NCBI GenBank assembly: GCA_002269645.1
Contig: NIVC01000012.1
Coordinates: 248,001-312,000, forward strand
Length of the DNA stretch: 64,000 nucleotides
Reading direction: 5' to 3'
DNA from: Macrostomum lignano
Taxonomy: Eukaryota
Shown here: in pieces, positions 2,121-45,884 of the stretch
How positions within the stretch are numbered: position 1 is the stretch's first letter
Layout: each line of letters starts with the position of its first letter
The notes under the pieces: model-generated
What the model was told of the DNA's origin: nothing
The model's input: the letters and a program-made list of their open reading frames with translations, nothing else
Databases searched by the model: none
Position numbers and translations under genes: made by a program

Positions 2121-2937
2121 GATGGTGTGTGGTAAAACCCTGTTTTGACGTTATGCCATTTCGTACCGGCGATTTATCGTTGTTAAATAAGTTGAATAAA
2201 ATTAACGCAAAGATTTTGTGACAGGCGTTGTAAAGTTTTAACTTTAGGTAGTAAATTTTGATTACGCAATATTTTAATCTGGTCGATTTCAGCGCGTGAC
2301 CCATCCGCTGATGTTATCAAGTAACAGTCTCTTCAGTTTGACCTTAACCTTGGCTTCTACCTTTTACAAAACAATGTCTCCAGTAAACCAGAAGCTACAC
2401 AAAATTGCCGAGTGCAAAAGATGCTAAAGGTAGTTAATTTTTGACCAGATATTTGCAGCCGCAAAGAGAGCCTGTTATCCTCAGTGACCCTAAATTTGTT
2501 CCTGTGGTTCAGCCAGTATTTTCCTTAAGCCAGTAAAGTGCCTCTTGGCCAAGATCAGGTACTCGTTAATCACAAGGATTGTTTCTTTTCGGAAGACCAG
2601 GGGTCTTTCGCCCGCGATATGGATACCAACAGCTGACCTGCAGGGAGCCAATGAACCTACCTAGCTGGCGTCGCTGATATTTATATCAGCAAGCATTGAC
2701 GACTTCTATTGCGGCAGAGCGCAATCAGAATCAACATTGACCAGTCCTCGTACCAGCTAGCAGTTCAAAAGTAAATATATTTACTTTCGTATTTTTTGGC
2801 AATTTTAAAAGTACATGGCCAGTTTAATTTCAGTATAGTTTCTTAGAAAAGAGCTGAAGGCACTGGAAAAATAAGATTTTTTGTCGATTGAATTTGTCTA
2901 GGGCAAAAGTCCATTCAGCGCTATGCATTCTCTAGAG

Positions 2938-3050: not shown

Positions 3051-3915
3051 TCCCTTCTCTCTAATCTCCTCTCTCGTCTCTTTTCTCTCCTCTCCTCTCC
3101 TCTCGTCTCCTCTCTCCTCCTCTCCTCTCCTCTCCTCTCCTCTCCTCTCGTCTCCTCTCTCCTCTCCTCTCCTCTCCTCTCCTCTCCTCTCCTCTCCTCT
3201 CCTCTCGTCTCCTCCTCTCCTCTCCTCTCCTCTCTCCTCTCGTCTCCTCTCTCCTCTCCTCTCCTGCTATCCTCTCCTCTCCTCTCTCCTCCTCTCCTCT
3301 CGTCTCCTCTCTCCTCTCCTCTCCTGCTATCCTCTCCTCTCCTCTCCTCTCTCCTCTCTCCTGCTTTTCCTCTCCTCTCTCCTCTCGTCTCCTCTCTCCT
3401 CTCCTCTCCTGCTATCCTCTCCTCTCCTCTCTCCTCCTCTCCTCTCGTCTCCTCTCTCCTCTCCTCTCCTGCTATCCTCTCCTCTCCTCTCTCCTCCTCT
3501 CCTCTCGTCTCCTCTCTCCTCTCCTCTCCTGCTATCCTCTCCTCTCCTCTCCTCTCTCCTCTCTCCTGCTTTTCCTCTCCTCTCTCCTCTCCTCTCCTCT
3601 CTCCTCTCTCCTCCTTTTCCTCTCCTCTCCTCTCCTCTCCTCTCCTATCCTCTCCTCTCCTCTCCTCTCCTCTCCTCTCCTCTCCTCTCCTCTCCTCTCC
3701 TCTCCTCTCCTCTCCTCTCCTCTCCTCTCCCCTCCTCTCCTCTCCTCTCCTCTCCCCTCCTCTCCTCTCCTCTCATCTCCTCTCCTCTCCTCTCCTCTCC
3801 TCTCCTCTCCTATCTCCTCTCCTCTCTCCTCCTCTCCTCTCGTCTCCTCTCCCTCTCGTCTCCTCTCTCGTCTCCTCTCTCCTCCTATCCTCTCCTCTCC
3901 TCTCTCCTCTTCTCT
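3050..3915. repeat. CT-rich (CTCTC-type) microsatellite
   Basis: Almost pure C/T, with (TCTCC)n stretches. Confidence 0.95.
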
Positions 3916-4544: not shown

Positions 4545-4590
4545 CTGCGAGAATGAGATTGATACAGAGATAGTTAAGTGATAGCTAATG

Positions 4591-13500: not shown

Positions 13501-13640
13501 GTGAGTTACAGTGAGTTACAGTGAGCTACAGTGAGTTACAATGATGAGTTACAATGAGTTACAGTGATTTACAGTGAGTTACAGTGAGTTACAGTGAGTT
13601 ACAGTGAGTTACAGTGAGTTACAGTGAGTGACAGTGAGTA
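4591..13640. repeat. ~9-kb 10-bp satellite (TTACAGTGAG)n filling hemicentin intron 1
   Basis: Units ttacagtgag, ctacagtgag, ttaaaatgag, ttacggtgag and the 13-bp variant ttacaatgatgag. Confidence 0.98.
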
Positions 13641-13888: not shown

Positions 13889-14569
13889 TGCTTCGGCTTA
13901 TTCTCCAAAAAGACAAACTCGAAGAAGGAAAGCTCCTAGTTAGGCTGGCCTTGCAGATACCCTGGCAGTCATAAATGGATTAGGTGGTTAGGTGAGGTGA
14001 AACACATTCGACCGTGTACTTGTCGGCCAATCAAATTCTGTTTAAAGCAGCTAGCTTGGACCATTTCTTACCTTCTACTGGCCAGCCGCCAGTTAGCAGC
14101 GGGGAGTCTTTGGTAGACAGGGCAGGAGGGAAAAAAAACACCGTTTTAAACGCTATTTACGCCTAACGATCCGGAGTGAGGGTCTGGCTATTCCCTAGAA
14201 ACTTGAAGAGGCCATGTTTGGCTGCCAGATGATGGGCCGTAAGGTGGTGCCTAGGGGATTTTGGCGAACTATTCACTGCAGAATTGGGGACGAGGATTCT
14301 ATTGGGCGCAAGAGCTTTCTGTAAAGCCTACGGGGTGGATATTTTACTTTTATGCGACCAGCCCTCATAGAAAAAATTCATCTTAGCTACTAAGATCCGG
14401 GGCGTTCGTGTTTCACCTTGCACTGGAAGGCCCGGATCCTGCCTTGCTTGGTTGGCGGGCAGCTTTGGGAGTGCACGAGAGGCTTTTAAGCCAGGTGGGT
14501 CGGCCTTTGGGATTTTTGTTTGGCAAAGTGTCTGCGGTATTGCCTTCGGCTTATTATCATTCTACTATC

Positions 14570-15682
14570 TCTCCTATCTCCTCTCCCCTCTCTCCTCTCT
14601 CCTCTTTCCTCTCTCTTCTCTCCTCTCTCCTCTCCCCTCTCTCCTCTCTCCTCTTTCCTCTCTCCTCTCTCCTCTCTCCTCTCCCCTCTCTCCTCTCTCC
14701 TCTTTCCTCTCTCCTCTCTCCTCTCTCCTCTCCCCTCTCTCCTCTCTCCTCTCTCCTCTTTCCTCTCTCCTCTCTCCTCTTTCCTCTCTCATCTCCCCTC
14801 TCTCCTCTCTCCTCTCTCCTCTCTCTCCTCTCTCTCCTCTCTCCTCTCTCCTCTCTCCTCTCTCCTCTCTCCTCTCTCCTCTTTCCTCTCTCTTCTCTCC
14901 TCTCTCCTCTCCCTCTCTCCTCTCTCCTCTTTCCTCTCTCCTCTCTCCTCTCTCCTCTCCCTCTCTCCTCTCTCCTCTTTCCTCTCTCCTCTCTCCTCTC
15001 TCCTCTCCCCTCTCTCCTCTCTCCTCTCTCCTCTTTCCTCTCTCCTCTCACCTCTTTCCTCTCTCATCTCCCCTCTCTCCTCTCTCCTCTCTCCTCTCTC
15101 TTCTCTCCTCTCTCCTCTCTCCTCTCTCCTCTCTCTTCTCTCCTCTCTCCTCTCTCCTCTCTCTTCTCTCTTCTCTTTTCTCTCTCTTCTCTCCTCTCTC
15201 CTCTCTCCTCTCTCTCCTCTCTCTCCTCTCTCTCCTCTCTCCTCTCTCTTCTCTCTTCTCTCCTCTCTCCTCTCTCCTCTCTCTTCTCTCTTCTCTTTCC
15301 TCTCTCCTCTCTCTTCTCTGTCCTCTCTCCTCTATCCTCTCTCCTCTCTCCTCTCTCTCCTCTCTCTCCTCTCTCCTCTCTCTCCTCTCTCCTCTCTCCT
15401 CTCTCTTCTCTCCTCTCTCCTCTCTCCTCTCTCTTCTCTCTTCTTTTTCCTCTCTCCTCTCTCCTATCTCCTCTCTCGTCTCTCTTCTCTCTTCTCTCTC
15501 CTCTCTCCTATCTCCTCTCTCTTCTCTCTTCTCTTTCCTCTCTCCTCTCTCCTCTCTCCTCTCCCCTCTCTCCTCTCTCCTCTCTCATCTCCACTCTCTC
15601 CTCTCTCCTCTCTCCTCTCTCTCCTCTCTCTCCTCTCTCCTCTCTCTCCTCTCTCTCCTCTCTCCTCTCTCCTCTCTCTTCT

Positions 15683-15732
<50 letters not shown>

Positions 15733-15972
15733 CTCCTCTCTCCTCTCTCCTCTCTCCTTCTCCTCTCTCTCTCTCTCTCTCTCCTCTCTCCTCTCTCCTC
15801 TCTCTTCTCTCCTCTCTTTCCTCTCTCCTCTCTCCTCTCTCTTCTCTCTTCTCTCTCCTCTCTCCTATCTCCTCTCTCTTCTCTCCTCTCTTTCCTCTCT
15901 CCTCTCTCCTCTCTCTTCTCTCTTCTCTCCTCTCTCTTCTCTCTCCTCTCTCTTCTCTCCTCTCTTTCTCTC

Positions 15973-16042
<70 letters not shown>

Positions 16043-16097
16043 TCTCTTTCCTCTCTCCTATCTCCTCTCTCTTCTCTCCTCTCTCCTCTCTCCTCTG
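14570..16097. repeat. 1.5-kb CT-rich microsatellite between the divergent genes
   Basis: Pure pyrimidine tract on + strand; source of the S/L/P ORFs. Confidence 0.96.
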
Positions 16098-18345: not shown

Positions 18346-19007
18346 GTCTGTCCGGCCTTCCTGTCCCAGCCGCTTGACATGTCATTTTACTATCCTACAG
18401 AATCTTTTCCTTCGTCTCCTCAAAGCTTTTCCGTTTATCAATCAGTCATATTCGTCTTTCCCTTTCCGGTCTTTCGTGTTCGTTCAAAACTTTTTTCTGA
18501 CGTAATTACGCTCGTAGTATACCGAAAAAGGTATACTAAAAGGTAATCTGTCTCTGTACCACTCCTTCAAATTAAAATTATGTTGATGTACTTATTGCAC
18601 TCACAAATAATTAATATTATTACTCCTAATATAAAGATTTTCTTTCGTGTTCGTTCGTCAAGCCTTTTACTTACATGTTTTATCGATACGTTTTAAATAG
18701 ATATTTGATAGCCTGGTAAGCAACTTGTTTTTAGTTTTATTATTTTGAAGGCCTTCAATGCTCGAAAAATTAATCCTAATAATTTTTGTCACAGCGAGTG
18801 TTTGTCCCCAGAACTCTTTACCCAGCTACACGCCACTCACCTGTAATGGGTATTTCTTGATGAGCTTATTATTATCTTCAAACATTCAATAATCAATAAT
18901 TGCGTCCATAAATGATTTTTGCTGACTTTGGCTACTTAAATTTTCTTTAATTTTTCTTCTTAATATTGTATGGCAAATTTAGAAGTTGAGGTAAGCTACA
19001 GTAAAAC

Positions 19008-20550
<1,543 letters not shown>

Positions 20551-21123: not shown

Positions 21124-21142
21124 GTGAGTTCGTGTCTGAGTG

Positions 21143-22623
21143 TGGTAGTGTGGTATAGTGTGGCATAGTGTGGCAGTGTGTGGCAGTGTGTGGTATAGTG
21201 TGGTATAGTGTGGCAGTGTGTGGTATAGTGTGGTATAGTGTGGTATAGTGTGGCATAGTGTGGCAGTGTGTGGCAGTGTGTGGTATAGTGTGGTATAGTG
21301 TGGCAGTGTGTGGTATAGTGTGGCAGTGTGTGGTATAGTGTGGTATAGTGTGGCAGTGTGTGGTATAGTGTGGTTTAGTGTGGCAGTGTGTGGTATAGTG
21401 TGGTATAGTGTGGTATAGTGTGGTATAGTGTGGCAGTGTGTGGTATAGTGTGGTAGTGTGTGGTATAGTGTGGTATAGTGTGACAGTGTGTGGTATAGTG
21501 TGGCATAGTGTGGCATAGTGTGGTATAGTGTGGCAGTGTGTGGTATAGTGTGGTATAGTGTGACAGTGTGTGGTATAGTGTGGCATAGTGTGGTATAGTG
21601 TGGCAGTGTGTGGTATAGTGTGGCATAGTGTGGTATAGTGTGGCAGTGTGTGGTATAGTGTGTGGTATAGTGTGGTATAGTGTGGCAGTGTGTGGTATAG
21701 TGTGGTATAGTGTGGTATAGTGTGGCAGTGTGTGGTATAGTGTGGTATAGTGTGGCAGTGTGTGGTATAGTGTGGCAGTGTGTGGTATAGTGTGGTATAG
21801 TGTGGCAGTGTGTGGTATAGTGTGGCAGTGTGTGGTATAGTGTGGCAGTGTGTGGTATAGTGTGGTATAGTGTGGCAGTGTGTGGTATAGTGTGGTATAG
21901 TGTGGCAGTGTGTGGTATAGTGTGGTATAGTGTGGCAGTGTGTGGTATAGTGTGGTATAGTGTGGCAGTGTGTGGTATAGTGTGGCAGTGTGTGGTATAG
22001 TGTGGTATAGTGTGGCAGTGTGTGGTATAGTGTGGCAGTGTGTGGTATAGTGTGGTATAGTGTGGCAGTGTGTGGTATAGTGTGGCAGTGTGTGGTATAG
22101 TGTGGTATAGTGTGGCAGTGTGTGGTATAGTGTGGCAGTGTGTGGTATAGTGTGGTATAGTGTGGCAGTGTGTGGTATAGTGTGGTTTAGTGTGGCAGTG
22201 TGTGGTATAGTGTGGTATAGTGTGGTATAGTGTGGTATAGTGTGGCAGTGTGTGGTATAGTGTGGTAGTGTGTGATATAGTGTGGTATAGTGTGGCAGTG
22301 TGTGGTATAGTGTGGCAGTGTGTGGTATAGTGTGGTATAGTGTGGTATAGTGTGGCAGTGTGTGGTATAGTGTGGTATAGTGTGGTATAGTGTGGTATAG
22401 TGTGGTATAGTGTGGTATAGTGTGGTATAGTGTGGTATAGTGTGGTATAGTGTGGTATAGTGTGGCAGTGTGTGGTATAGTGTGGTAGTGTGTGGTATAG
22501 TGTGGTATAGTGTGACAGTGTGTGGTATAGTGTTGTTTAGTGTTGCAGTGTGTGGTATAGTGTGGTATAGTGTGGTTTAGTGTGGTATAGTGTGGTATAG
22601 TGTGGTATAGTGTGGTATAGTAT
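21143..22623. repeat. 10/12-bp mixed tandem repeat (GTGTGGTATA / GTGTGGCAGTGT)
   Basis: Direct reading. Confidence 0.96.
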
Positions 22624-23109
22624 GGTAGAGTTTAAGTTAATCCATGTAGTAGAGTGTAAAGAGTAGAGTACAGAGTGCAGTGCTGTCTTATTTGGTAAAA
22701 GAATTCGCTCTTGTGTTTTTTTTCAATGTTGCAAGCCACTTTTCCAGTCGTCGCTTATAGATATGGTTGACAGCGCATATGAAGGAAATCTGATGGCGTG
22801 TCTTGTACCCAACACAGACTCGCTACAAATCCGTCTCAGCATCCGCCTTTCCTGGTTCCTGCCCCCGACCTCGCAACTGTTTAGAATGCATGGGAGAATT
22901 TCCCATCTCCGGAGCATCCAAGACTGTGGGCGATGGGACTTCCGCTTTGCTATTTACCCAGGGTTTAGGGGCCTGGCCTGGCGTTCATGACAGGGCCGGC
23001 AGAGGGCGGGTGCGACCAAACTAAAGTGTGAGCAGCGATAAATGTAAGGCTTTGACTGACTTTAAAAAGGGACAGGCAGTTATTCAGTTTATATCGGTAG
23101 ATTCCGTTA

Positions 23110-32767: not shown

Positions 32768-33511
32768 TCAATGCACGCTGAACTTGACCCAGTCGGCGCT
32801 CGTCTCGATCTCGGCCTCCACCTGAGCGTCGGTGAACAGCAGCAGGCGGCAGGCTCTCAGCTTGCTGTTGTACAGCACGTGTCTGCAGTTGCCAGAGTTG
32901 AAAGCTGACATGACACAAGCCAGCTCGGAGTGAACATTGGTCAGGTCAGAGTAGCAGTACTCAGAGCTGGCATGGTAGCTGGTCCGCTTAAACGGAGTCA
33001 GTTTAAAATTCAGATGCGTCTGAGAAGCCCTCTGCTTCCACTCGCAAGCGAATCCAAGTGAGCGAGAACAAGGGTAGTTTCCGATTTTTCCATACGACAA
33101 ATGTATTACGCAGTTTTCGATGGTGCCTCCGTTTGGCCCAGTTGAAACACCCCACAGTGAGTCATTCAGCGGCATGATGCCATTGCCATTGACCATCTGC
33201 CAGCCCGATCTGCTCGAAGACCTCTCGTCAGCCAAGTCGGTCACTCCAAACCAGATGTGGCAGCTGCTGCAGGCGAAGCTCGGCATGCTGCTGAGCAGCT
33301 GCAGAGAGCTGTACGAGTTGAGCAGCTCGCCTCCGATCATGGCGCACTGCCGGTTGGCCTCGCACCAGCTGACTCTGTTCACCTTGTTCACGAAGATGCA
33401 CTTCCCGGCCTCAAGGCTGAACGGCGAGGGGCACAGCTGGGCCAGAGCTGACAGCAACAGGCAGTTAAGAACGCCTTGAAGAAGCAACAACATCAGTTCA
33501 AATGGCGACAT
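32768..33511 (-). CDS. Secreted C-type lectin domain + PAN/apple-like domain protein, intronless
   Basis: Signal peptide (MLLLLQGVLNCLLLSALAQ); CPSPF..GKC, W.EA..C, WFGVTD, GW, GPN...ENCV, YPC...FACE; C-terminal C..C..VLYN...C.L PAN-like pattern. Confidence 0.88.
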   Translation of the reverse strand: MSPFELMLLLLQGVLNCLLLSALAQLCPSPFSLEAGKCIFVNKVNRVSWCEANRQCAMIGGELLNSYSSLQLLSSMPSFACSSCHIWFGVTDLADERSSSRSGWQMVNGNGIMPLNDSLWGVSTGPNGGTIENCVIHLSYGKIGNYPCSRSLGFACEWKQRASQTHLNFKLTPFKRTSYHASSEYCYSDLTNVHSELACVMSAFNSGNCRHVLYNSKLRACRLLLFTDAQVEAEIETSADWVKFSVH

Positions 33512-34074
33512 GATATATTGACAGACTTTCTTCAGCTTTCTATAGGTGTTGCAGGTCAAGGATTGAAGTTAGCAAGTTTGAGACCATAGCAATCCATTTT
33601 ATACATTATAAAGGTTTCGAGTTGCGTGTTGCTTCCAATTGGTTAAAATACAGCATGAAGGACTGAGAGGCTTTACGCGTAAGGCCTTACCCCGTCTACA
33701 AAAAAGGTTTTCAGAATGTTTGACTGGCATGGCTCTGTGCTTAAATTCCCTGTTCCAAGGATGCTGGGAATATCCATGATGCAGTTGACAGCGCCTTGAA
33801 CTCTGCTAGGAAAACTTGCAGGTGGCTTTGACAGACTGGCTCAAGCATTTCTAAAGCAACTCAGATCATAAATATTGCTTATTTCGCTTTAGAAGCGATT
33901 GATTTTCTGACAAACTGACGACTTTTTTAAGAACACGATTCGGCTGCTGACTGACAATCTTTGTCTTGAGAATGCCTAGAAGCATACAGTAGTTGGGAAT
34001 TGGTAGAGTTGGCAGAAGTATGCTTTTAGCTTCTCAGCTACAACCTACATGCCCGCTGATATGCATGGTGTCAA

Positions 34075-35154: not shown

Positions 35155-35416
35155 TCAAACCCGCTGCTTAATAACCATGGTGATAAGTTTGGGTTTCGAA
35201 CCCAGCTGCGGTGGATCGCAATCTTCATCGGCCTCTAAAACTCTTAGCTGCAGTCGCTTCTTAGCTGGCGTTGGCCTCCTGCGGCACAGGTGCAGCAGGA
35301 ACTGCAGTTGGCTCTCGGCCGATGCCACTTCAGCTTCCAGACGTTGATTGTTGGCAACCAGTTGCGAGTGTCGGGACTTGGCCAGCGAGTTGGATTGGCG
35401 CTGCTTTGCTCTGTAT
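35155..35416 (-). CDS. ATF4: ATF4/ATF5-like bZIP exon 2 (RYRAKQRQSNSLAKSRHSQLVANNQRLEAEVASAESQLQFLLHL...)
   Basis: Acceptor gccctcag|A (phase 2) completes CG from exon 1, giving NREAAYRYRAKQR plus heptad leucines; stop TGA 35157-35155. Not in the ORF track. Confidence 0.8.
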
Positions 35417-35524
35417 CTGAGGGCGGGGGCGAGGCTTGGCGTTGTGTGTGCGACTGTTGGGGCATGTGGACTTAGAGCAGAGATAGAAGGGATAGAGCAG
35501 AGAGGAGTTCACAGAGGAAGAGAT

Positions 35525-35810
35525 CAGGGGGGGGGTTAAAGAGGGGGAGTCAGAGAGGGGAGCGTCAGTGAGGGGGAGGTCGGAGAGCCGATTAGAGAGG
35601 GGGGACGTCAGGGAGGGGGAGGTCCGAGAGGGGATGTCAGAGAGGGGGGAGGGCCGGGAGGGAGCGATCAGAGAGGGGGAGGTCCGGGAGGGAGTGATCA
35701 GAGAGGGGGAGGTCAGAGAGGGGATGTTAGAGAAGGGGAGGGCCGGGAGGGAGCGATCAGAGAGGGGGAGGTCCGAGAGGTCAGAGAGGGGATCCGAGAG
35801 AGGGAGTCAG
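35525..35810. repeat. G/A-rich ~20-bp tandem repeat in the bZIP intron
   Basis: gagagggggaggtccgggagggag-type units. Confidence 0.8.
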
Positions 35811-35832
35811 TGGGCATCAGTTAGCAACCAAC

Positions 35833-36431
35833 CGATAGGCAGCCTCTCGATTAGCCTCGCTTTTAGTCTTCATATTAGAAGATTTCGACTTCCTGCCGAA
35901 ACCGCCGCCTTTGCCTCTGCCTCTGCGAGGCAGCACCTGCGGCGGTGGCGTCTGATCGACAGACGACGTCAATGACGATGACATCACCAAATCTTCATCT
36001 GCGTCGTCATCATCAACATCGTCGAAAACCGGTCGATCCGGCGGCATCAACTCATCGACATCAAAGTCGACACCGTCCAAGTCGAGAAGACAGTCGCGAA
36101 CAGTCGAAGCACCCGCGGTATCTGCCGAGTCTGGCGTAAGAAATGGAAAAATACTATCCATCTCGGCGTCATTAGCAACGGCACTGTTGCTAGGGAAGCC
36201 GTCAAGCAGCACCGATGACACTTCATCATCATCATCGTCCGTACGATGGGAGGCTGGGCCGGACTTAGGCAACAGCGAATCAGTTAGCCAAACTGATGCG
36301 GATGACAGGAGCAGCTCAACGTCTTGCTCAGCGTGACGAGCATCCTGACAGAGACTAAGATATGAAGAGAAATCTCCACCACTGGCATCCGTCATTGGCG
36401 GAGTCACCATTGAAGCCATGTTGGCAGTCAT
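35833..36431 (-). CDS. ATF4: ATF4/ATF5-like bZIP exon 1 (acidic activation-like region + basic region KTKSEANREAAYR)
   Basis: Asp-rich N-terminus and N-x7-R basic motif when spliced at CG|GTTGGT; similar to ATF4 QNKTAATRYRQKKR...L..N..L...L.YLK.L. Confidence 0.8.
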
Positions 36432-36531
36432 GCTTGCAGAAGTGATTATGCTTGGTAGTAGTAGTAGTATTAGTAGCAGTAGTCTTATTGTACTTTGAGC
36501 ACTGAGTTGACTGGCAGGTAAAGGTAGCCAT
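36355..36531 (-). promoter_or_regulatory. uORF2 (58 aa) overlapping the ATF4-like start out of frame
   Basis: gccaacATGg strong Kozak context, 100 nt upstream of the main ATG; open to TAG at 36357-36355; 77-nt overlap. Confidence 0.7.
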
Positions 36532-36605
36532 GTTGGCGTCTGTGTTGGGTTTTCGTTGCGTTTCTTGACTGTCTGGCCTTACGGGGCGCAGCGGTGTAGC
36601 TGGTG

Positions 36606-36635
36606 CTACTGGCGATTCATCTCTGCTGACGGCAT
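36606..36635 (-). promoter_or_regulatory. uORF1 (MNRQ* from 36620, or MPSAEMNRQ* from 36635)
   Basis: ATG AAT CGC CAG TAG; 74 nt from its stop to uORF2, with no intervening ATG. Confidence 0.6.
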
Positions 36636-38573: not shown

Positions 38574-39473
38574 TCAGAATCTACTAACACGAATAGGAAT
38601 ATTTTCAGACACCAAATAGTCGTCTTGAAACACGACAACAATGTTGACTTCGAATTCGATTCGGAAATTGGTAGCCGAAACGCTTGGACAGGTGAACAGA
38701 CGCGGCAGCACCATGTGCAGAGGGATTTTAATCCCTCTGGGAGCGTCTCCATCAGCCACTTGGATATTCTGTATCTCAGTAGTCTCTTTAGCGTAGCCTT
38801 CCAGACAGCCGCAGGTCTCTACGCGTACCAGCTGCAGTTCTACACTTTTAATCCGAGTAGCGCACTGCTCAATGACTAGCTCGCCACTCAGTGGCTCAGA
38901 AATACTAATGTGACTCGATGTGAGTTGGCCGGTGACGCGAAATTTCGGTAGACTGGCCTTGTTCTGAACATTGACTACACTGTCCGGGCTGATAGCGAAA
39001 GTTACTGGCGTCTGCGAGCTCGGTTGGCCAGCATTCTTTGGATTGTATTCGACTAAGAACTCGCAAGTTTTGCTGAGATCTTTGTTCAATAGAGAGCGTT
39101 TTAAGTCCAATTGAAGCACGTACTGAATGTTAATGAACACTCCGTGGTATGTCTCATACAGTGTTTTGTTACCCTTGGATTTGAACGGTATTTCAAATGG
39201 GATTTCTGTTAATCCGGTGGTGAATTTGCCAGGCTTAGCTAGTTCTAGTGTGGCTCCGGTCAGTTGAATCGGCTTGATACTGTTATAGAATGCTTCGAAT
39301 ACTCCGACATTTTTTGAGCTAAGCTGCATGCTAACTGTGCCAGTCAGATTCAATGTGAGACCATTGTGACCGCAGTCTTGTTTGCATCGAATCACGGCAT
39401 AGCCGGAGATTGTGTCACCATCGGTGTACGTTTTGTTAATACGCTTCAAACGAATGTCTAAAGTGGCTGCCAT
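38574..39473 (-). CDS. VPS26C: VPS26C/DSCR3 (Retriever complex subunit), intronless, 299 aa
   Basis: LDIRLKR.NK.Y, MQLSSKNVGVFEAFYNSIKPIQL, LYETYHGVF.NIQY, ELQLVRVETCGC.EGY, PRLFTCP, FE.NIVV.F..DYL..EN all match DSCR3. Confidence 0.97.
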   Translation of the reverse strand: MAATLDIRLKRINKTYTDGDTISGYAVIRCKQDCGHNGLTLNLTGTVSMQLSSKNVGVFEAFYNSIKPIQLTGATLELAKPGKFTTGLTEIPFEIPFKSKGNKTLYETYHGVFINIQYVLQLDLKRSLLNKDLSKTCEFLVEYNPKNAGQPSSQTPVTFAISPDSVVNVQNKASLPKFRVTGQLTSSHISISEPLSGELVIEQCATRIKSVELQLVRVETCGCLEGYAKETTEIQNIQVADGDAPRGIKIPLHMVLPRLFTCPSVSATNFRIEFEVNIVVVFQDDYLVSENIPIRVSRF

Positions 39474-39564
39474 TGCGGTTGTAGAGTTGACACATGCAAA
39501 TAGATGGAGTTGAAATATATTAGAAAGACATGATAATTGATTACACCTGACCTAATAGCCAGAT

Positions 39565-39765
39565 GTACAACCGACAGCTCAGCCGTAGTTATTGCTCCAC
39601 TCCAAGGACTGGGGGGCACCCATTTTAAAGCTGGGTTAACTGCAGCAATGCAGAGTTAATGCGTCTTGCTCAAGGACACAAATTGTTGTGAGTGGGTCGA
39701 GAATCGAACCCCCTTAGACCTTTTAGTCGTGAATCCGACGCTCTAATAACCACTAGGCTGCAACC
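39565..39765 (-). mobile_element. tRNA-derived SINE family A (CORE-like), internally deleted
   Basis: Reverse complement of the head and core of 31343-31610 (cttgctcaaggacacaaattg...gggtcgagaatcgaaccc). Confidence 0.82.
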
Positions 39766-40304
39766 GACGTAGCGGTTGATCTTAATGATTTTAGATGACA
39801 AAAATGACAAATTTCAGTTCTAATGTTGTCAGCGTAAGTTACCCCCGAGGGGGGCTAAGCTGCTAGTCCTATATACTAAATATTAAGCGTTTTAACAGAA
39901 TAACTGAGACTACAGCGGTAGACCTAATTGTATTAGACAATGTAAAAAGCCTAAATTAGTTTAACTAAAGTATTCCTATGAATGCTACTTATGAAAATAA
40001 ACAAATGTAAGGCACAGAAGAGAGTTAATAAAGTAAAAAAACACCTGTCACAACGTATGAAATACTTTTGCATCGATTAGGCAGTTATTGTATTGTGTAT
40101 TATTAGAACAAACATAGTTTTAAATGCTTGACGTATGACTTATGCATGTACCACTGGACCTCTCACTGTGAACCAATGTGTTGAATAAAGATAAAGACTA
40201 CTTATCTACTTTACTCCCGGTGTTCTCAATCTTTATCAAGCAAGTTACTTACTGGCTCAGGTACAAAAGTTTTGTTAGCGCACAAATATTATTCTTTTAT
40301 ACTA

Positions 40305-40898
40305 CTAAGTAGCGATAGTAGTTTTAACCGACAAAGTCTGCAAACAAACTGGGCAAGAGTGCAAAGAGTCGTGCAACAGCCGATCGCAATCGATACAATA
40401 ATGAGACCGACAGTCGCTGCACTGGTAGGCTTCCGTGCTAGCGCCTAGTCTGTCGCCACATCCGCAACAGCCCGTACTGGCCGCCAAGGTGACCTCGGCG
40501 AATGCCTTCAACGGGAACAGGTGCTGATAGGATCTGGCCAGGTGAGCGGCGCTGGCCAAACTTAATCCGCAAATCCGACAATCAACCGGCAGCTCGCAGT
40601 AAAGACAGGCGCACTGGGGGCAGGCGTGAGCGGTGGCCCCGGCTGATAGTACGGTGCCGTGACAGGCGCAAATGCGGATGACATCCTGCTTGGATCTCGG
40701 CTGCTCCTGGCCATCCTGCCCAGCCGAGTAGGGGAAGCCCATTTTGATCAGAGCGGGATCGGGAGCGCTGGCCGGCGGCGGCAGGAAGCTGGACATGATG
40801 TCGGACAGATGGACAGCGTCTAGCGGCACAGAGTAGGTGCCACCAGTGGCCTGGGCGAGTTTGCGCAATACGCGAATATCCGCTGACAGAGATATTAC
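40305..40898 (-). CDS. GTF2H2: TFIIH p44 exon 3 (end of VWA, zinc finger CPQC...C, C-terminal C1/RING-like)
   Basis: tttacag|GTA acceptor; LA..TGG.Y.V.LD..HL, MGFP, CPQC...YCELP..C..CGL.L..A.HLARSY.HLFPL..F, C.DCD...HDSLH.CP.C. Confidence 0.95.
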   Translation of the reverse strand, partial: VISLSADIRVLRKLAQATGGTYSVPLDAVHLSDIMSSFLPPPASAPDPALIKMGFPYSAGQDGQEQPRSKQDVIRICACHGTVLSAGATAHACPQCACLYCELPVDCRICGLSLASAAHLARSYQHLFPLKAFAEVTLAASTGCCGCGDRLGASTEAYQCSDCRSHYCIDCDRLLHDSLHSCPVCLQTLSVKTTIAT

Positions 40899-40999
40899 CT
40901 GTAAATTGGGCAATTTATGGGAAAGGGACGCCAATTGGCAAGGTTTAGAAGGTAAAACAATGTTCCCTAGAGCTTGCACTTTGCCCTTGACGCATCATG

Positions 41000-41590
41000 G
41001 CGGAACAGAGACAGAGAGATGGAGAGAGGCTAGGAAGGAAAGCGTTGGGAGAAAGTAGAAAGAGGGTAAAGAGGGTAGACAAAGGATAGACGAGAGTGAG
41101 GATAGAGGGGAGAGATCTAAGGGGGGGGGGAGGGTAAAATGAGAGAAAGGGAAGCGGGGACGCGAGAGAGAGAGAGAGAGGAAATCAGGTAGAAAGTAAT
41201 TAGAAAGAGGGTAAAGAGGGTAGAGAAAGGATAGACGAGAGTGAGGATAGAGGGGAGAGATCTAAGGGGGGGAGGGTAAAATGAGAGAAAGGGAAGCGGA
41301 GACGCGAGAGAGAGCGGAAATCAGGTAGAGCGGAAAGCGGGTGGAGAGGGGAAGGTGGGTAGACAGGGGAAGGCGGGTAGAGAGAGGAAAGCGGGTAGAG
41401 GGGAAAGCGGGTAGAGGGGAAAGCGGGTAGAGGGGAAAGCAGGTAGAGAGGGCAAGGCGGGTAGAGAGGGGAAAGCGGGTAGAGGGGAAAGCAGGTAGAG
41501 AGGGCAAGGCGGGTAGAGAGGGGAAAGCGGGTAGAGGGGAAGGAGGGTAATTAGAGGAAAGCGGGTAGAGGGAAAGGAGGGTAGGAAGGG
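41000..41590. repeat. G/A-rich intronic repeats: a duplicated ~130-bp block and ~17-bp GCGGGTAGAGGGGAAA units
   Basis: 41060-41200 is repeated at 41215-41330, followed by tandem units. Confidence 0.8.
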
Positions 41591-41658
41591 TACAGATCTA
41601 GGACTTGAAAAACAGTAACAATAAAAGAAAAAAAGGCAGACAGAAATGATTCACTCAC

Positions 41659-42174
41659 CGAACACCTGATCCTAGCCTTGGCCAGTTTGCTAATGGTCGC
41701 ACCGATATCTCCCGGATCGCAGGTGCTCAAGGCTGACACCAGCACGAGAACCTCTTTGCAGGCGTGGCCTGGCAGGGGGCCCAGCGTGTCGTAGGCCATC
41801 TCCAGCAGGTTCTGAAATGACGCCTCCCCTTCGGGACGGGCGGTTTTGCCCGAGCCGGCCTGAGCCAAATCTTTTAGCGCGTCCAAATGTCGCCTGGGAT
41901 TGCCAGTGAGCTCGGTCACTCTCTCGGCCAGCTTCCGTCTGGTCAGCAGTACGCCCAGCTGTCCGATGGGATTCTGATCGAAGAATCCGGACACGAAGTT
42001 GCGCATTGCGGATAGGCAGGCGGCTAAACGGCAGGGTTTGAGATCGGCCAAGCCCATGGTCTCTGAGCAGTCCAGGCACAGCAGCAGGTGCCGCATCATG
42101 CCCAGCTTGCTGGCCCGGCCACCGCCGCCGGGTAGCAGGGCTGCCGCTGCGAGACGGTGCCGGCGCTTGCGGGC
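41659..42174 (-). CDS. GTF2H2: TFIIH p44 exon 2 (Ssl1-like VWA: KLGMMRHL...DLKP.RL...FFDQNPIGQLG...LSTCDPGDI)
   Basis: ccgcag|GCC acceptor and TCG|GTGAGT donor; 172 codons, phase 0/0. Confidence 0.95.
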
Positions 42175-42196
42175 CTGCGGGGTTTGGGGTTCGATA

Positions 42197-42372
42197 CTGA
42201 CTGACTGACTGACTGACTGACTGACTGACTGACTGACTGATTGACTGACTGACTGACTGACTGACTGACTGACTGACTGTCTGACTGACTGACTGTCTGA
42301 CTGTCTGACTGACTGACTGACTGACTGACTGACTGACTGACTGACTGTCTGACTGACTGACTGACTGACTAG
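42197..42372. repeat. (GACT)n microsatellite in GTF2H2 intron 1
   Basis: Direct reading. Confidence 0.95.
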
Positions 42373-42414
42373 CTAACTAAATAAGTCCAATGAGCCCAAT
42401 AACAATTCACCCAC

Positions 42415-42609
42415 CTGCTCCAGACGCCCAACAGCCCCAGCCAGGCGACCCTCCTCATCCTCAGCCAGGGCCTCCCAGGAGCGCTCGAACTGCGACTCCC
42501 AGCGAAAGCCGCCGCCAGAGAGCGCGGCCGCATCCTCGTCCTGAAGCCGGTAGCCGCTGGTGCCCGCTGTGGGTCGCGCAGACGGCTTTGCGAATCCGTA
42601 GTTTGCCAT
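42415..42609 (-). CDS. GTF2H2: TFIIH p44 exon 1 (RWESQFERSWEALAEDEEGRL)
   Basis: Matches the p44 RWE..YERTWE.L.EDE.G motif; CAG|GTGGGT donor, phase 0. Confidence 0.9.
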
Positions 42610-42684
42610 GCTGTTTGCTGTTCAAACTCTTGGCATGCATAAGCATGGGGCTGTGCCTGCTTGACTGACTGGCAATATGATTCA

Positions 42685-43165
42685 CTGGGGATCTGGGAGG
42701 CTGGCCCAGCAACTGAGGATCTGGGAGGCTGGCCCAGCAACTGACACTCTGGGAGGCTGGCCCAGCAACAGACACTCTGGGAGGCTGGCCCAGCAACTGA
42801 GAATCTGAGAGGCTTGCCCAGCAACTGAGCATCTGGGAGGCTGGCCCAGCAACTGGGGATCTGGGAGGCTTGCCCAGCAACTGAGCATCTGGGAGGCTGG
42901 CCCAGCAACTGGGGATCTGGGAGGCTGGCCCAGCAACTGACACTCTGGGAAGCTGGCCCAGCAACTGACACTCTGGGAGGCTGGCCCAGCAACTGGGGAT
43001 CTGGGAGGCTGGCCCAGCAACTGACACTCTGGGAGGCTGGCCCAGCAACAGACACTCTGGGAGGCTGGCCCAACAACTGACACTCTGGGGAGCTGCTGGC
43101 CCGGCAACGGAGGATCTAGGAGGCTGGCTCAGCAACTGGGGATCTGGGAGGCGGGCCCAGCAACT
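42685..43165. repeat. 28-bp GC-rich minisatellite (CTGGGAGGCTGGCCCAGCAACTGACACT) between SURF1 and GTF2H2
   Basis: Period 28 (42721, 42749, ...); about 17 units. Confidence 0.94.
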
Positions 43166-43348
43166 CTAGCATGGGCCCAGCATGTCTAAAACAAAGAAAA
43201 ATAAATAGTCAAGAACGAAAAACCATGTAAGAAGCCTATTTAAAAAAGCACAATAATTTTCATGAAAGATTTAATAGGTCAATAAAGTATTAAACTAATT
43301 CTGAGAGCATATGTATAGTACACAGATTATGATGTATAGTATCTTTCA

Positions 43349-43641
43349 TCATCGAATTCGCATAGCCCAGAACACCAGCAGCAGCGCGCCCAGAGAATAC
43401 CAGGTAACAATATAGGACAGGTGCTCGTTACGCAAGCTCAGTCTAGTCTGCCCGCCAATAGGAAAAGTGCCAGCAGATTCACTAGAATCCATGCCAGAAG
43501 CGCAGGCGTCAACAAAGAATGGCAGGGTGTTGAGCTCGCCGCTCAGAGCTTCGACATCGCGGCGTATGCGGCAGGTGACGCCGCGGCGAGCGCTGCGAGA
43601 CTGAGGCCCGACAGCGCCGCTGTTGGCCGGGCTGCGGGCGT
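43349..43641 (-). CDS. SURF1: SURF1 last exon (PIGGQTRLSLRNEHLSYIVTWYSL)
   Basis: ccgcag|AC acceptor, phase 1; diagnostic SURF1 C-terminal motif; stop TGA. Confidence 0.92.
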
Positions 43642-43659
43642 CTGCGGGCGATTCAAGGC

Positions 43660-44300
43660 ATGCTGCCTTCATCTCTGACCCTTCCCAACATGCTGCCTTC
43701 ATCTCTGACCCTTCCCAACACGCTGCCTTCATCTCTGACGCTTTCCAACATACTGCCTTCATCTCTGACCCTTCCCAACATGCTGCCTTCATCTCTGACC
43801 CTTCCCAACATGCTGCCTTCATCTCTGACCCTTCCCAACATGCTGCCTTCATCTCTGACCCTTCCCAACATGCTGCCTTCATCTCTGACCCTTCCCAACA
43901 CGCTGCCTTCATCTCTGACGCTTCCCAACATACTGCCTTCATCTCTGACCCTTCCCAACATGCTGCCTTCATCTCTGACCCTTCCCAACATGCTGCCTTC
44001 ATCTCTGACCCTTCCCAACACGCTGCCTTCATCTCTGACCCTTCCCAACATGCTGCCTTCATCTCTGACCCTTCCCGACATGCTGCCTTCATCTCTGACC
44101 CTTCCCAACATGCTGCCTTCATCTCTGACTCTTCCCAACATGCTGGCTTCATCTCTGACCCTTCCTAACCTGCTGCCTTCATCTCCGACCCTTCCTAACA
44201 TGCTCCCTTCATCTCTGACCCTTCCTAACATGCTTCCTTTATCTCTGACCCTTCCTAACATGCTGCCTTCATCTCTGACCCTTCCCTCCATGCTCCCTTT
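43660..44300. repeat. 30-bp minisatellite (CATGCTGCCTTCATCTCTGACCCTTCCCAA) filling a SURF1 intron
   Basis: About 21 near-identical units. Confidence 0.96.
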
Positions 44301-44369
44301 ACTTTTTTTCAGCCAACATGTATCTTAAATTTATTCAAGCATGAACCAGCAGCACCAATAGCTCCTCAC

Positions 44370-44594
44370 CGACAAGATAGCCTCCAACCAATCCAGCCGG
44401 TTCAGTCAGCCTCACCAAACCGGTCAATTCCACTCGGCCTCTCTGCTGCCATTGCGGCCTGGTAGCTGGATCGGCCAGCTTAGCCGGTACCCAGCCGCGA
44501 TTCACCAGGACACGCTCGCCGCTATCAGCCAATCGGAACGGAGTGATCACGTGATAGCCAACCCCGGCTCCGCTAGAGAATAGACTGTTGCCGC
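44370..44594 (-). CDS. SURF1: SURF1 middle exon (GYHVITPF...VLVNRGWVP...LTGLVRLTE)
   Basis: tgtgcag|GC acceptor and G|GTGAGG donor; 225 nt, phase 1/1; VNRGWVP motif. Confidence 0.92.
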
Positions 44595-44649
44595 CTGCAC
44601 AGGTGTTTGTGTTATGATAGAGTTTTATTAGTGTTTTTAAATATCTATT

Positions 44650-45200
44650 ACCGTATTAGTGTATTACCTATTACCGTATCAGATAGTGTATTACCTATTA
44701 CTGTATCAGATAGTATATTTCCTATTACCCTAATTAGTGGTAGTACCTATTACCCGAATTAGTGTATTACTAATTACCCTAATTAGTGTATTACCTATTG
44801 CCCTAATTAGTGTATTATCTATTACCCTAATTAGTGTATTACCTATTACCGTATCAGATAGTGTATTGCCTATTACCGTATCAGATAGTGTATTACCTAT
44901 TACCCTAATTAGTGTATTACTAATTATCCTAATTAGTGTATTACCTACTACCCTAATTAGTGTTTATCTATTACCCTAATTAGTGTATTAACTATTACCC
45001 TAATTACCTAATTATTTAATTATCTAATTACTCTAATTATCTATTACCCTAATTAGTGTATTACCTATTACCCTTATTAGTGCATTATACCTATTACCCT
45101 TATTAGTACATTACACATAATTCTCTAATTAGCGTATTACCAATTATCCTAGTTAGTATATTAACTTTTACCGTATCAGATACATGTAGTGTTACCTATT
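44650..45200. repeat. AT-rich ~21-bp degenerate tandem repeat (ATTAGTGTATTACCTATTACCCTA-like)
   Basis: Direct reading; lies in a SURF1 intron. Confidence 0.85.
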
Positions 45201-45395
45201 GTACTTTGTTAAAACTCTTGACACAAGGAGCGTCACTCTAGAACAATAACCACCAAATCTTGTCCTTATTAGTGTTTTATCTATTAGCTAAAACAGTAAA
45301 ACTTTTTAAAAATCAATTAGAACTCTATAAAATACTGGCTTTATATCTCTCACTAGCTACTAATTAGTATGAAATATATTATTATCAAAACTGAC

Positions 45396-45843
45396 CGTCA
45401 GCACCAGCACTTGATTTCGGATCGATAAGATGCCGCGGTCCAATCAGAACCTCGCCATCGTGATCGAATTCGCCTATAATTCTAACAGGTCTGAACTCCA
45501 TGTCGTCTAAAGACTTAGCCATCAGCTCCTTCACCGAGCCGCCATCAACAATCACAGGCGGTTGAGTAGTTCTCCTATTCAACGATTCAATCAAATCCAA
45601 TTTCCATTGCCGTCGATAAACCTGCCAGGTGCCTAAACAGAAGCAGATTGCTGGAAATGCTAGAAACCATTTGTTACGAGGACCGTCGCTATCGCGACCT
45701 TTGTAAGAGTTGGAGTAGCCGCGTTGCACTGTCGTGTATTTGAAAGCATGTTGGCTTGCTGCTTCTAGCAAAGGGTAATGCGGATTTCTCAAGCAGCGAA
45801 GTGGCTGTAGGAGCAGCACCGCTCGTTGACAATGAAAGCTGGA
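45396..45843 (-). CDS. SURF1: SURF1 first identifiable exon (transit-peptide-like N-terminus, LGTWQVYRRQWK, EFRPV...G.FDH); no initiator ATG
   Basis: Acceptor tttctttttcttgcag|TCC (phase 0) and donor G|GTCAGT (phase 1). The ORF-track start is a TTG inside the acceptor. Confidence 0.9.
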
Positions 45844-45884
45844 CTGCAAGAAAAAGAAATTTAACAGTTGCGAGCGCGCAAACT

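What the first reader, a model, noticed from the sequence alone, without database searches (positions are those of the whole stretch)
35155..36635. Hidden ATF4-like bZIP gene with the complete two-uORF stress switch
The ORF track shows only an acidic 204-aa ORF. Splicing CG|GTTGGT (35833) to cag|A (35416) builds a full ATF4/5-type bZIP. Upstream lie a 4-codon uORF1 (MNRQ*), a 74-nt ATG-free spacer, and a strong-Kozak 58-aa uORF2 overlapping the main start out of frame by 77 nt. This closely mirrors mammalian ATF4 (3-codon uORF1 and an overlapping ~59-codon uORF2), which is induced by eIF2alpha phosphorylation through delayed reinitiation. Inference: integrated-stress-response translational control in this lineage. 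If the mRNA is trans-spliced at the AGs near 36626-36623, a leader AUG would create another tiny uORF (MQR* or MR*).
Basis: partly seen in the sequence, partly recalled or inferred. Interest (0 to 1): 0.72.

Follow-up and report, generated by a model that had tools for sequence, protein, structure and literature searches.

The report
Flatworm ATF4-like gene with two-uORF switch
This is the already-annotated ATF4-type stress transcription factor gene of the flatworm Macrostomum lignano, and its mRNA leader carries the same short-uORF plus overlapping-long-uORF arrangement that controls ATF4 translation in other animals, so it is a real but expected feature.

Summary
The window is Macrostomum lignano (assembly GCA_002269645.1, contig NIVC01000012.1). 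The spliced product scores as Pfam bZIP_2; the unspliced ORF does not. A profile of the domain from M. lignano and two related species hits human ATF4 as best solved structure, 10 bits above any other bZIP.

The strongest new evidence is comparative. RNA-seq contigs encoding orthologues (35-45% identical) from two other species begin with the 3' part of the Macrostomum spliced leader. It is joined 2 nt upstream of a 2-codon uORF1. A strong-context 60-64-codon uORF2 follows and overlaps the main start out of frame by 77-86 nt. The leaders are otherwise unalignable.

Neither the M. lignano mRNA 5' end nor stress induction was tested. Paired ATF4 uORFs are already reported across Metazoa except nematodes, so this is a new member of a known kind. 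Its small twist is a spliced-leader AUG upstream of uORF1.

The parts
36623..36627 (-). Candidate spliced-leader acceptor AGs (CAG|CAG|AG) just upstream of uORF1. Inferred, not shown for M. lignano.
   Evidence: Orthologue cDNAs carry the Macrostomum SL joined 2 nt upstream of their uORF1 ATG. Splicing after the AG at 36624/36623 would give the same 2-nt distance. The published trans-splice acceptor motif YTNCAG is matched only partly. The SL is not encoded in the window.
36633..36635 (-). Upstream in-frame ATG that would lengthen uORF1 to 9 codons (MPSAEMNRQ*). Probably outron or not functional.
   Evidence: It is present in the window. It is replaced by CTG in the homeologous locus L001.
36606..36620 (-). 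uORF1: ATG AAT CGC CAG TAG (MNRQ*). Proposed reinitiation-permissive short uORF.
   Evidence: Sequence. It is identical in L001. Orthologues have a 2-codon uORF1 (MD*/ME*) at the equivalent first position.
36532..36605 (-). 74-nt ATG-free spacer between the uORF1 stop and the uORF2 start (scanning and ternary-complex reacquisition interval).
   Evidence: The spacer is 75 nt in L001. In the orthologues the distance to the strong-context uORF2 ATG is 119 and 111 nt.
36355..36531 (-). uORF2: 58 sense codons plus TAG, start context GCCAACATGG, +1 frame relative to the main ORF, overlapping it by 77 nt. Proposed inhibitory uORF.
   Evidence: It is intact in L001 with two synonymous differences. Orthologues have 64 and 60 codons, context GCCAAGATGG, the same frame offset, and overlaps of 86 and 77 nt. 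The peptide sequence is not conserved.
35833..36431 (-). Coding exon 1: acidic N-terminal region and the first half of the basic region (...KSEANREAAYR). The first ATG is at 36431. A second in-frame ATG at 36419 has the stronger context GCCAACATGG.
   Evidence: It matches GenBank PAA94264.1.
35417..35832 (-). 416-nt GT..AG intron made largely of C/T-rich 15/30-nt tandem repeats. The donor is GTTGGT (GTTAGT in L001).
   Evidence: L001 has a shorter intron through repeat-copy loss. The annotated gene span is 1277 nt, which equals 861 + 416.
35155..35416 (-). Coding exon 2: second half of the basic region (YRAKQR...), leucine zipper, C-terminal tail and TGA stop.
   Evidence: The Pfam bZIP_2 match covers residues 190-234 and spans the junction.
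35410..35416 (-). Tandem acceptor (CAG|ATACAG|AGC). Use of the downstream AG removes Tyr-Arg from the basic region (AAYRAKQ).
   Evidence: The UniProt model A0A1I8H250 (P0002) of a third copy reads AAYRAKQRQ. Orthologue cDNAs and the GenBank models use the upstream junction.

Best explanation
The locus is the ATF4/5-family bZIP transcription factor gene of Macrostomum lignano (BOX15_Mlig009092g1). It has two coding exons, and the single intron splits the DNA-binding basic region.

Its mRNA leader carries a very short uORF1, an ATG-free spacer, and a strong-context uORF2 of about 60 codons that ends 77 nt inside the main ORF in another frame.

The most likely mechanism is the delayed-reinitiation switch described for ATF4:
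- Ribosomes translate uORF1, and the 40S subunit resumes scanning.
- When eIF2-GTP-Met-tRNAi is abundant, they reinitiate at uORF2 and are carried past the main AUG. Little factor is made.
- When eIF2alpha is phosphorylated, ternary complex is reacquired later. Some subunits pass the uORF2 AUG and start at the main AUG 100 nt further on.

The mRNA is probably SL trans-spliced just upstream of uORF1, as its orthologues are. The leader's own terminal AUG then adds a tiny or weak-context uORF0.

Shown: gene model, domain class, presence and conservation of the uORF layout, and SL on the orthologue mRNAs. Inferred: the M. lignano 5' end and SL site, translation of the uORFs, and stress inducibility.
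For: Gene model:
- It is identical to GenBank PAA94264.1 on NIVC01000012.1.
- bZIP_2 scores 22.9 bits against a cut-off of 22.3, and only for the spliced product.

Family:
- An exhaustive phmmer search of 1.84 billion representatives found only three relatives outside M. lignano itself.
- Two are cDNA-encoded orthologues sharing NREAAYRYRxKQR.
- The third, P0006, matches human ATF4 at E 6e-9, with the next bZIP at 0.058.
- The macrostomid domain profile ranks human ATF4 first in the PDB at 27.8 bits, E 2.2e-5. Next are NFIL3 17.7, GCN4 16.9, ATF2 15.2 and C/EBPalpha 13.8 bits.

Leader:
- All coordinates were verified.
- The layout is intact in homeologue L001.
- Contigs L003-L006 from RNA-seq runs SRR28338163-5 and SRR30276812 start with ...GCGAAGACTCAATTTATTGCATG. 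This equals positions 12/13-35 of the published M. lignano SL.
- In those contigs the SL is followed by CC-ATG-GAT-TAA or CC-ATG-GAG-TAG. A uORF2 of 64 or 60 codons follows in context GCCAAGATGG, in the same +1 offset, overlapping the main ORF by 86 or 77 nt.
- The leaders are unalignable between species, and the proteins are 35-45% identical. What is preserved is therefore the architecture, not the sequence.
- Shuffles give the architecture in 0.15-0.4% of trials per leader.

Literature:
- Human ATF4 has a 4-codon uORF1 and a 60-codon uORF2, 27 codons of which overlap the ORF, and it works by delayed reinitiation (PMC12839439).
- Paired uORFs are reported across Metazoa except nematodes, sometimes with a weak-context uORF upstream of uORF1 (PMC4176352).
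Against: - No transcript evidence for M. lignano itself could be retrieved. Exact-product look-ups found only the genome record.
- The candidate acceptor only partly fits the published YTNCAG motif.
- Only about 30% of M. lignano genes are trans-spliced.
- The Pfam score is barely above threshold.
- A single-sequence PDB search put C/EBPbeta (E 0.031) marginally ahead of ATF4 (0.087).
- No full bZIP phylogeny was built, and I could not check whether M. lignano has another, more ATF4-like gene.
- The species behind the orthologue RNA-seq runs are not identified.
- The shuffle criterion was defined after seeing the data.
- Stress induction is untested.
Confidence: 0.75

Rival explanations
1. The uORFs are in the genome but not in the mature M. 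lignano mRNA. The transcript starts or is trans-spliced downstream. One example is the AG at 36541/36540, where the SL AUG would be in frame with the main ORF and give an N-terminally extended protein. In this case there is no two-uORF switch in this species.
For: Several AGs lie in the leader. Splicing at 36574/73, 36565/64 or 36541/40 would put the SL AUG in frame with the main ORF with no intervening stop. No M. lignano transcript was available.
Against: Orthologue mRNAs in two other species keep both uORFs downstream of the SL. uORF1, the spacer and uORF2 are intact in the homeologous copy. The strong-context uORF2 ATG and its frame offset are conserved although the leader sequences are not.
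Confidence: 0.1
2. The protein is a lineage-specific bZIP of the C/EBP/PAR/ATF4 super-group rather than the ATF4/5 orthologue. Its uORF control would then be convergent or shared with other uORF-regulated bZIPs such as C/EBPs, CHOP or Drosophila Xrp1.
For: A single-sequence PDB search ranks C/EBPbeta slightly above ATF4. The Pfam score is marginal. Only the roughly 55-residue bZIP region is comparable. Other ISR-linked bZIPs also have regulatory uORFs (Xrp1, PMC13268129, title and abstract).
Against: The family profile prefers ATF4 by 10 bits. The Tyr in RYR aligns with ATF4's RYR, whereas the GCN4, NFIL3 and Jun alignments show RSR or KSR at that place. The only non-macrostomid relative found in 1.84 billion proteins is itself ATF4-like. 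The short uORF1 plus long overlapping uORF2 geometry is the ATF4 one.
Confidence: 0.1
3. The uORFs are translated but act only as constitutive dampers of a potent activator, or as NMD triggers. They do not respond to eIF2alpha phosphorylation.
For: No functional data exist. Overlapping uORFs alone are found in 6-19% of shuffled leaders.
Against: A simple damper does not need a minimal 2-4 codon first uORF followed by a 74-119 nt ATG-poor gap. This full layout is rare in shuffles and conserved in three lineages. The same geometry is the functional switch in ATF4 elsewhere.
Confidence: 0.05

Closest known systems
Mammalian ATF4 (and ATF5) mRNA leader
   Same: Both have a short first uORF: 4 sense codons here, against 4 codons in all (stop counted) in human. 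Both have a second uORF of about 60 codons with a good start context that overlaps the main ORF out of frame (77 nt here, 27 codons in human). The bZIP basic region is NxxAAxRYRxKxR.
   Different: The protein is only about 35% identical over the bZIP domain and unrelated elsewhere. An intron splits the basic region. The leader is probably capped by a trans-spliced SL whose terminal AUG creates an extra uORF0. Function is untested.
Invertebrate ATF4 homologues with paired uORFs (Aplysia ApCREB2/ATF4, Hydra, insect crc/ATF4, Tribolium)
   Same: The same paired-uORF arrangement is reported as conserved across Metazoa except nematodes. It includes an occasional weak-context uORF upstream of uORF1 (PMC4176352).
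   Different: No flatworm appears in that survey's text or held supplements. Here the upstream weak-context AUG is donated by the spliced leader in the orthologues.
Saccharomyces GCN4
   Same: It is a bZIP stress activator controlled by reinitiation after a short permissive uORF, and it responds to eIF2alpha phosphorylation (established knowledge; mentioned). GCN4 is among the nearer PDB bZIPs.
   Different: By established knowledge, GCN4 uses four short non-overlapping uORFs. Here the inhibitory element is one long uORF overlapping the main start.
C. elegans atf-4 (formerly atf-5)
   Same: It is an ATF4 homologue in another animal that uses SL trans-splicing.
   Different: The nematode leader is reported to lack the typical arrangement because its uORF1 is too long. 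The macrostomid leaders keep the typical arrangement.

Membership tests
bZIP transcription factors (Pfam bZIP_2, PF07716) | Basic region followed by a heptad leucine zipper, scoring above the family threshold | tested here: met
   The spliced protein scores 22.9 bits against a cut-off of 22.3 over residues 190-234. The unspliced 204-aa ORF has no hit. UniProt and GenBank precomputed data also list PF07716 for P0001. The margin is small.
ATF4/ATF5 subfamily | Basic-region signature N-x2-A-A-x-R-Y-R-x-K-x-R, with Tyr where most bZIPs have Cys or Ser | tested here: met
   ANREAAYRYRAKQR aligns column for column with human ATF4 QNKTAATRYRQKKR. The aligned GCN4, NFIL3 and Jun sequences show RSR, RSR and KSR. 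That the Tyr is diagnostic of ATF4/5 rests on my own knowledge of bZIP families.
ATF4/ATF5 subfamily | Closest known bZIP by sequence is ATF4 | tested here: met
   The profile of four macrostomid domains ranks ATF4 1ci6_A first at E 2.2e-5 and 27.8 bits, with the next bZIP at 17.7 bits. The single-sequence search was ambiguous: C/EBPbeta 0.031, ATF4 0.087. The PDB lacks ATF5, CHOP and some other families.
ATF4/ATF5 subfamily | Orthology shown by a phylogeny against all bZIP families, and no better ATF4 candidate in the same genome | not tested
   The word-indexed protein searches returned nothing useful and were then exhausted. No M. lignano proteome was available to scan.
ATF4-type translational switch | Short reinitiation-permissive uORF1, then an inhibitory uORF2 overlapping the main ORF out of frame, both in the mature mRNA | tested here: inconclusive
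   The layout is present in the genomic sequence and in the homeologue. It is shown to be in the mature SL-capped mRNA only for orthologues of two other species. The M. lignano mRNA 5' end was not retrievable.
ATF4-type translational switch | Evolutionary conservation of the uORF layout beyond sequence conservation | tested here: met
   Three lineages with 35-45% protein identity and unalignable leaders keep uORF1 at 2-4 codons, uORF2 at 58-64 codons, the same frame offset, a 100-109 nt distance from the uORF2 AUG to the main AUG, and a 77-86 nt overlap.
ATF4-type translational switch | Main-ORF translation induced by eIF2alpha phosphorylation and dependent on uORF1 and uORF2 | not testable with these tools
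   This needs Ribo-seq or reporter assays.

The most novel reading that the evidence does not exclude
In macrostomid flatworms the spliced leader is part of the ATF4 switch. The SL's own 3'-terminal AUG sits 2 nt upstream of the uORF1 AUG.

In M. lignano this would give MR*/MQR*, whose UGA overlaps the uORF1 AUG (AGAUGA). In the two other species it gives a 21-28-codon weak-context uORF0 overlapping uORF1.

Trans-splicing, or the choice between the SL AUG and the uORF1 AUG 5 nt further on, would then set how many ribosomes enter the reinitiation pathway. This would couple SL addition or start-codon stringency to integrated-stress-response sensitivity.
Probability: 0.15. Interest if true: 0.55.

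Novelty: new member of a known kind. Interest (0 to 1): 0.3.

Why it matters
It extends the ATF4 paired-uORF design to a flatworm lineage, which the survey I could read did not cover. Macrostomum lignano is a transgenesis-capable regeneration and stem-cell model, so the leader could serve directly as an integrated-stress-response reporter.

It also shows how the switch coexists with a spliced leader that ends in AUG. Nematodes, the other well-studied trans-splicing animals, are reported to have lost the typical arrangement.

It does not reveal a new mechanism or an unannotated gene.

Tried and rejected
The same sequence was reached through the cluster of P0001 as P0003.
- Look-ups of the uORF2 peptide and of the unspliced 204-aa ORF in the assembly index found nothing, so no M. 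lignano transcript contig was obtained. P0002 has no contig on record.
- Word-indexed homology searches with the bZIP region alone and with a four-sequence profile gave 0 and 1 hits. One call failed on the E-value limit. Named ATF4 relatives could therefore not be collected, and no tree was built.
- The genomic upstream region of the ATF4-like metagenomic relative P0006 (L007) could not be interpreted. An apparent intron and an unknown transcript start make its uATGs meaningless.
- Paper searches for the SRA run numbers, for the gene identifiers, and for Macrostomum plus ATF4 found nothing.
- Rfam found no RNA family in the window.
- The SL sequence is not in the window, which excludes a cis-encoded leader.
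- I considered and rejected the idea that the 9-codon extension from ATG 36635 is the real uORF1. That ATG is missing in the homeologue.

Full report
**What is there**

Every coordinate holds.

- The acidic 204-aa ORF runs 36431..35817.
- Joining CG|GTTGGT (exon 1 ends at 35833) to CAG|A (exon 2 starts at 35416) removes a 416-nt GT..AG intron.
- The result is an 861-nt CDS of 286 aa ending at 35155.
- The junction falls inside the DNA-binding basic region and restores ...KSEANREAAYR|YRAKQRQ....
- uORF1 (MNRQ*) occupies 36620..36606.
- A 74-nt ATG-free spacer follows.
- uORF2 (58 sense codons, context GCCAACATGG) runs 36531..36355. It starts 100 nt upstream of the main ATG in the +1 frame and ends 77 nt inside the main ORF.
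- An in-frame ATG at 36635 would lengthen uORF1 to nine codons.
- There is no further minus-strand ATG up to 36800. The uORF set therefore does not depend on where in that interval the transcript starts.

**Whose gene it is**

[quoted passage not shown] The 90% cluster of the first contains a 286-aa member, P0003. This is GenBank PAA94264.1, BOX15_Mlig009092g1, UniProt A0A267H9B0, 'BZIP domain-containing protein'.

Its gene span on NIVC01000012.1 is 1277 nt, which is exactly 861 + 416. So the window comes from assembly GCA_002269645.1, and the model is the deposited annotation. The gene is hidden only from a prokaryote-style ORF list.

Two other copies exist:
- A homeologous copy, P0001 (284 aa, 95% identical), lies on another contig (L001) behind the same neighbours SURF1, Ssl1 and Vps26.
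- A third copy, P0002, is modelled with an acceptor 6 nt further downstream, which deletes Tyr-Arg from the basic region.

**What kind of protein**

Pfam bZIP_2 is hit at 22.9 bits against a cut-off of 22.3, and only after splicing. A single-sequence search of solved structures was ambiguous: C/EBPbeta 0.031, ATF4 0.087, GCN4 0.5.

An exhaustive phmmer search of 1.84 billion representatives found only three relatives outside M. lignano.
- P0004 and P0005 share ...NREAAYRYR(L/M)KQR... and the C-terminal FLLxMCRQ motif.
- P0006 comes from a eukaryotic contig in a metagenome. It matches human ATF4 at E 6e-9, with the next bZIP at 0.058.

A profile of the four macrostomid domains ranks human ATF4 (1ci6_A) first at E 2.2e-5 and 27.8 bits. 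This is ten bits above NFIL3, GCN4, ATF2 and C/EBPalpha. The alignment places RYR on ATF4's RYR.

I take this as good, but not phylogenetic, support for the ATF4/5 class. The two remaining word-indexed searches gave nothing useful, so I could not assemble a named panel for a tree.

**The decisive comparative evidence**

P0004 and P0005 are encoded on 1.1-kb intronless contigs assembled from RNA-seq runs: L003-L005 from SRR28338163-5, and L006 from SRR30276812. L008, from sibling run SRR30276811, is a 5'-truncated copy of L006.

These contigs begin with (T)GCGAAGACTCAATTTATTGCATG. That is positions 12/13-35 of the published 35-nt M. lignano spliced leader CGGTCTCTTACTGCGAAGACTCAATTTATTGCATG (PMC8629364). 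The SL is reported to be highly conserved among Macrostomum species (PMC10468722).

Directly after the SL come these elements:

| Feature | M. lignano (window) | Species A (L003-L005) | Species B (L006) |
|---|---|---|---|
| uORF1 | MNRQ*, 4 codons | CC-ATG-GAT-TAA, 2 codons | CC-ATG-GAG-TAG, 2 codons |
| Gap from uORF1 stop to strong-context uORF2 ATG | 74 nt | 119 nt | 111 nt |
| uORF2 length | 58 codons | 64 codons | 60 codons |
| uORF2 start context | GCCAACATGG | GCCAAGATGG | GCCAAGATGG |
| uORF2 ATG to main ATG | 100 nt | 109 nt | 106 nt |
| Overlap with main ORF | 77 nt | 86 nt | 77 nt |

In all three, uORF2 has the same +1 frame offset. The orthologues' uORF1 has a strong context (G at -3 and +4). 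L006 also has a weak-context in-frame ATG at -145 that could extend its uORF2 to 73 codons. The orthologues' SL AUG has a weak context (U at -3, C at +4) and opens a 21- or 28-codon uORF0.

The three proteins are 35-45% identical. The leaders do not align, and the uORF2 peptides are unrelated. What is kept is therefore the geometry.

In dinucleotide-preserving shuffles of each leader, the full geometry appears in 0.15-0.4% of trials. That criterion was chosen after seeing the data. The homeologous M. lignano copy also keeps uORF1, a 75-nt spacer and uORF2. Its two differences inside the non-overlapping part of uORF2 are both synonymous, and it lacks the ATG at 36635.

**Trans-splicing in M. 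lignano itself**

The SL is not encoded in the window. By analogy with the orthologues, the acceptor should lie just upstream of uORF1. The sequence there is CCGTCAG|CAG|AGATGAAT.

Splicing after the AG at 36624/36623 would put the uORF1 ATG 2 nt behind the SL, as in the other species. The SL AUG would then read MR*, with its UGA overlapping the uORF1 AUG. The other AG gives MQR*.

It is still inferred, for these reasons:
- The site fits the published YTNCAG motif only in part.
- About 30% of M. lignano genes are trans-spliced.
- No M. lignano transcript could be fetched.
- Other AGs further down would place the SL AUG in frame with the main ORF, which is the main rival reading.

**Mechanism**

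The layout matches the ATF4 design. Human ATF4 has a four-codon uORF1 and a sixty-codon uORF2, 27 codons of which overlap the ORF, and it operates by delayed reinitiation (PMC12839439).

I therefore propose the following sequence:
1. uORF1 is translated, and 40S subunits resume scanning.
2. With ample ternary complex they reinitiate at uORF2 and terminate 77 nt past the main AUG.
3. With phosphorylated eIF2alpha, some subunits reacquire ternary complex only after passing the uORF2 AUG, and they start at 36431 or at the stronger 36419.

The steps after 'the uORFs are there and conserved' are inference.

**Novelty**

Paired ATF4 uORFs are reported as conserved in all Metazoa except nematodes. 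Aplysia, Hydra and arthropods are examples, and a weak-context uORF upstream of uORF1 is noted in some species (PMC4176352). That paper's text and its held supplements mention no flatworm. No paper in the library combines Macrostomum lignano with ATF4.

This is a new member of a known kind. It is a well-supported and useful annotation, with the modest twist that the upstream weak AUG is supplied by the spliced leader. A specialist would not be surprised, so I score interest at 0.3.

Noticed in passing
window 38574-45849 (minus strand); L002 601-7858; L001 121-7690: SURF1, Ssl1 (TFIIH p44) and Vps26 lie upstream of the bZIP gene, all in the same orientation and with short CDS-to-CDS gaps of about 0.7-0.8 kb. 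The 2.1-kb gap before the bZIP gene is about half (GACA)n-type repeat. By the repeat-adjusted 1-kb criterion of PMC8629364 this could be an operon-like cluster resolved by SL trans-splicing.
   Followed up: partly
window 35410-35416 (minus strand): A tandem acceptor CAG|ATACAG| is present. The downstream AG, used in UniProt model A0A1I8H250 of a third gene copy, removes Tyr-Arg and shifts the N-x7-R register of the basic region. It could be a mis-prediction or a real DNA-binding-defective isoform.
   Followed up: partly
window 35417-35832 and L001 homologous intron: The single intron consists mostly of C/T-rich 15/30/59-nt tandem repeats (CCTCCCCCTCTCTGA...). It differs between the two homeologues by a block of about 70 nt. 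The donor is the non-consensus GTTGGT (GTTAGT in L001), against the reported GT[G/A]AG consensus.
   Followed up: no
window 36456-36487 (inside uORF2): The middle of uORF2 is an (ACT)n-like trinucleotide repeat encoding a Thr run (TTATNTTTTT). Length changes here would keep the frame.
   Followed up: no
window 1-2122, 3065-3904, 4590-13639, 14568-16096, 19006-20550, 21139-22631 and others: A large share of the window is tandem repeat. This includes a 9-kb array of the 10-mer GTTACAGTGA (about 890 copies) and several (GACA)n, (TCTCC)n and 20-33-nt satellites. These explain the strong local GC and AT skews.
   Followed up: no
window 32768-33559 (minus strand): A 263-aa ORF downstream of the bZIP gene has a Cys/Trp pattern (WFGVTDL..., CEW) that is reminiscent of a C-type lectin-like domain. 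This is from memory only and was not searched.
   Followed up: no
L007 2670-3001: P0006 is the ATF4-like gene of an unidentified eukaryote in metagenome assembly ERZ26052449. It seems to have an upstream exon and intron (GT...TTTCAG) that the prokaryote-style gene call missed, so P0006 is probably N-terminally truncated.
   Followed up: no
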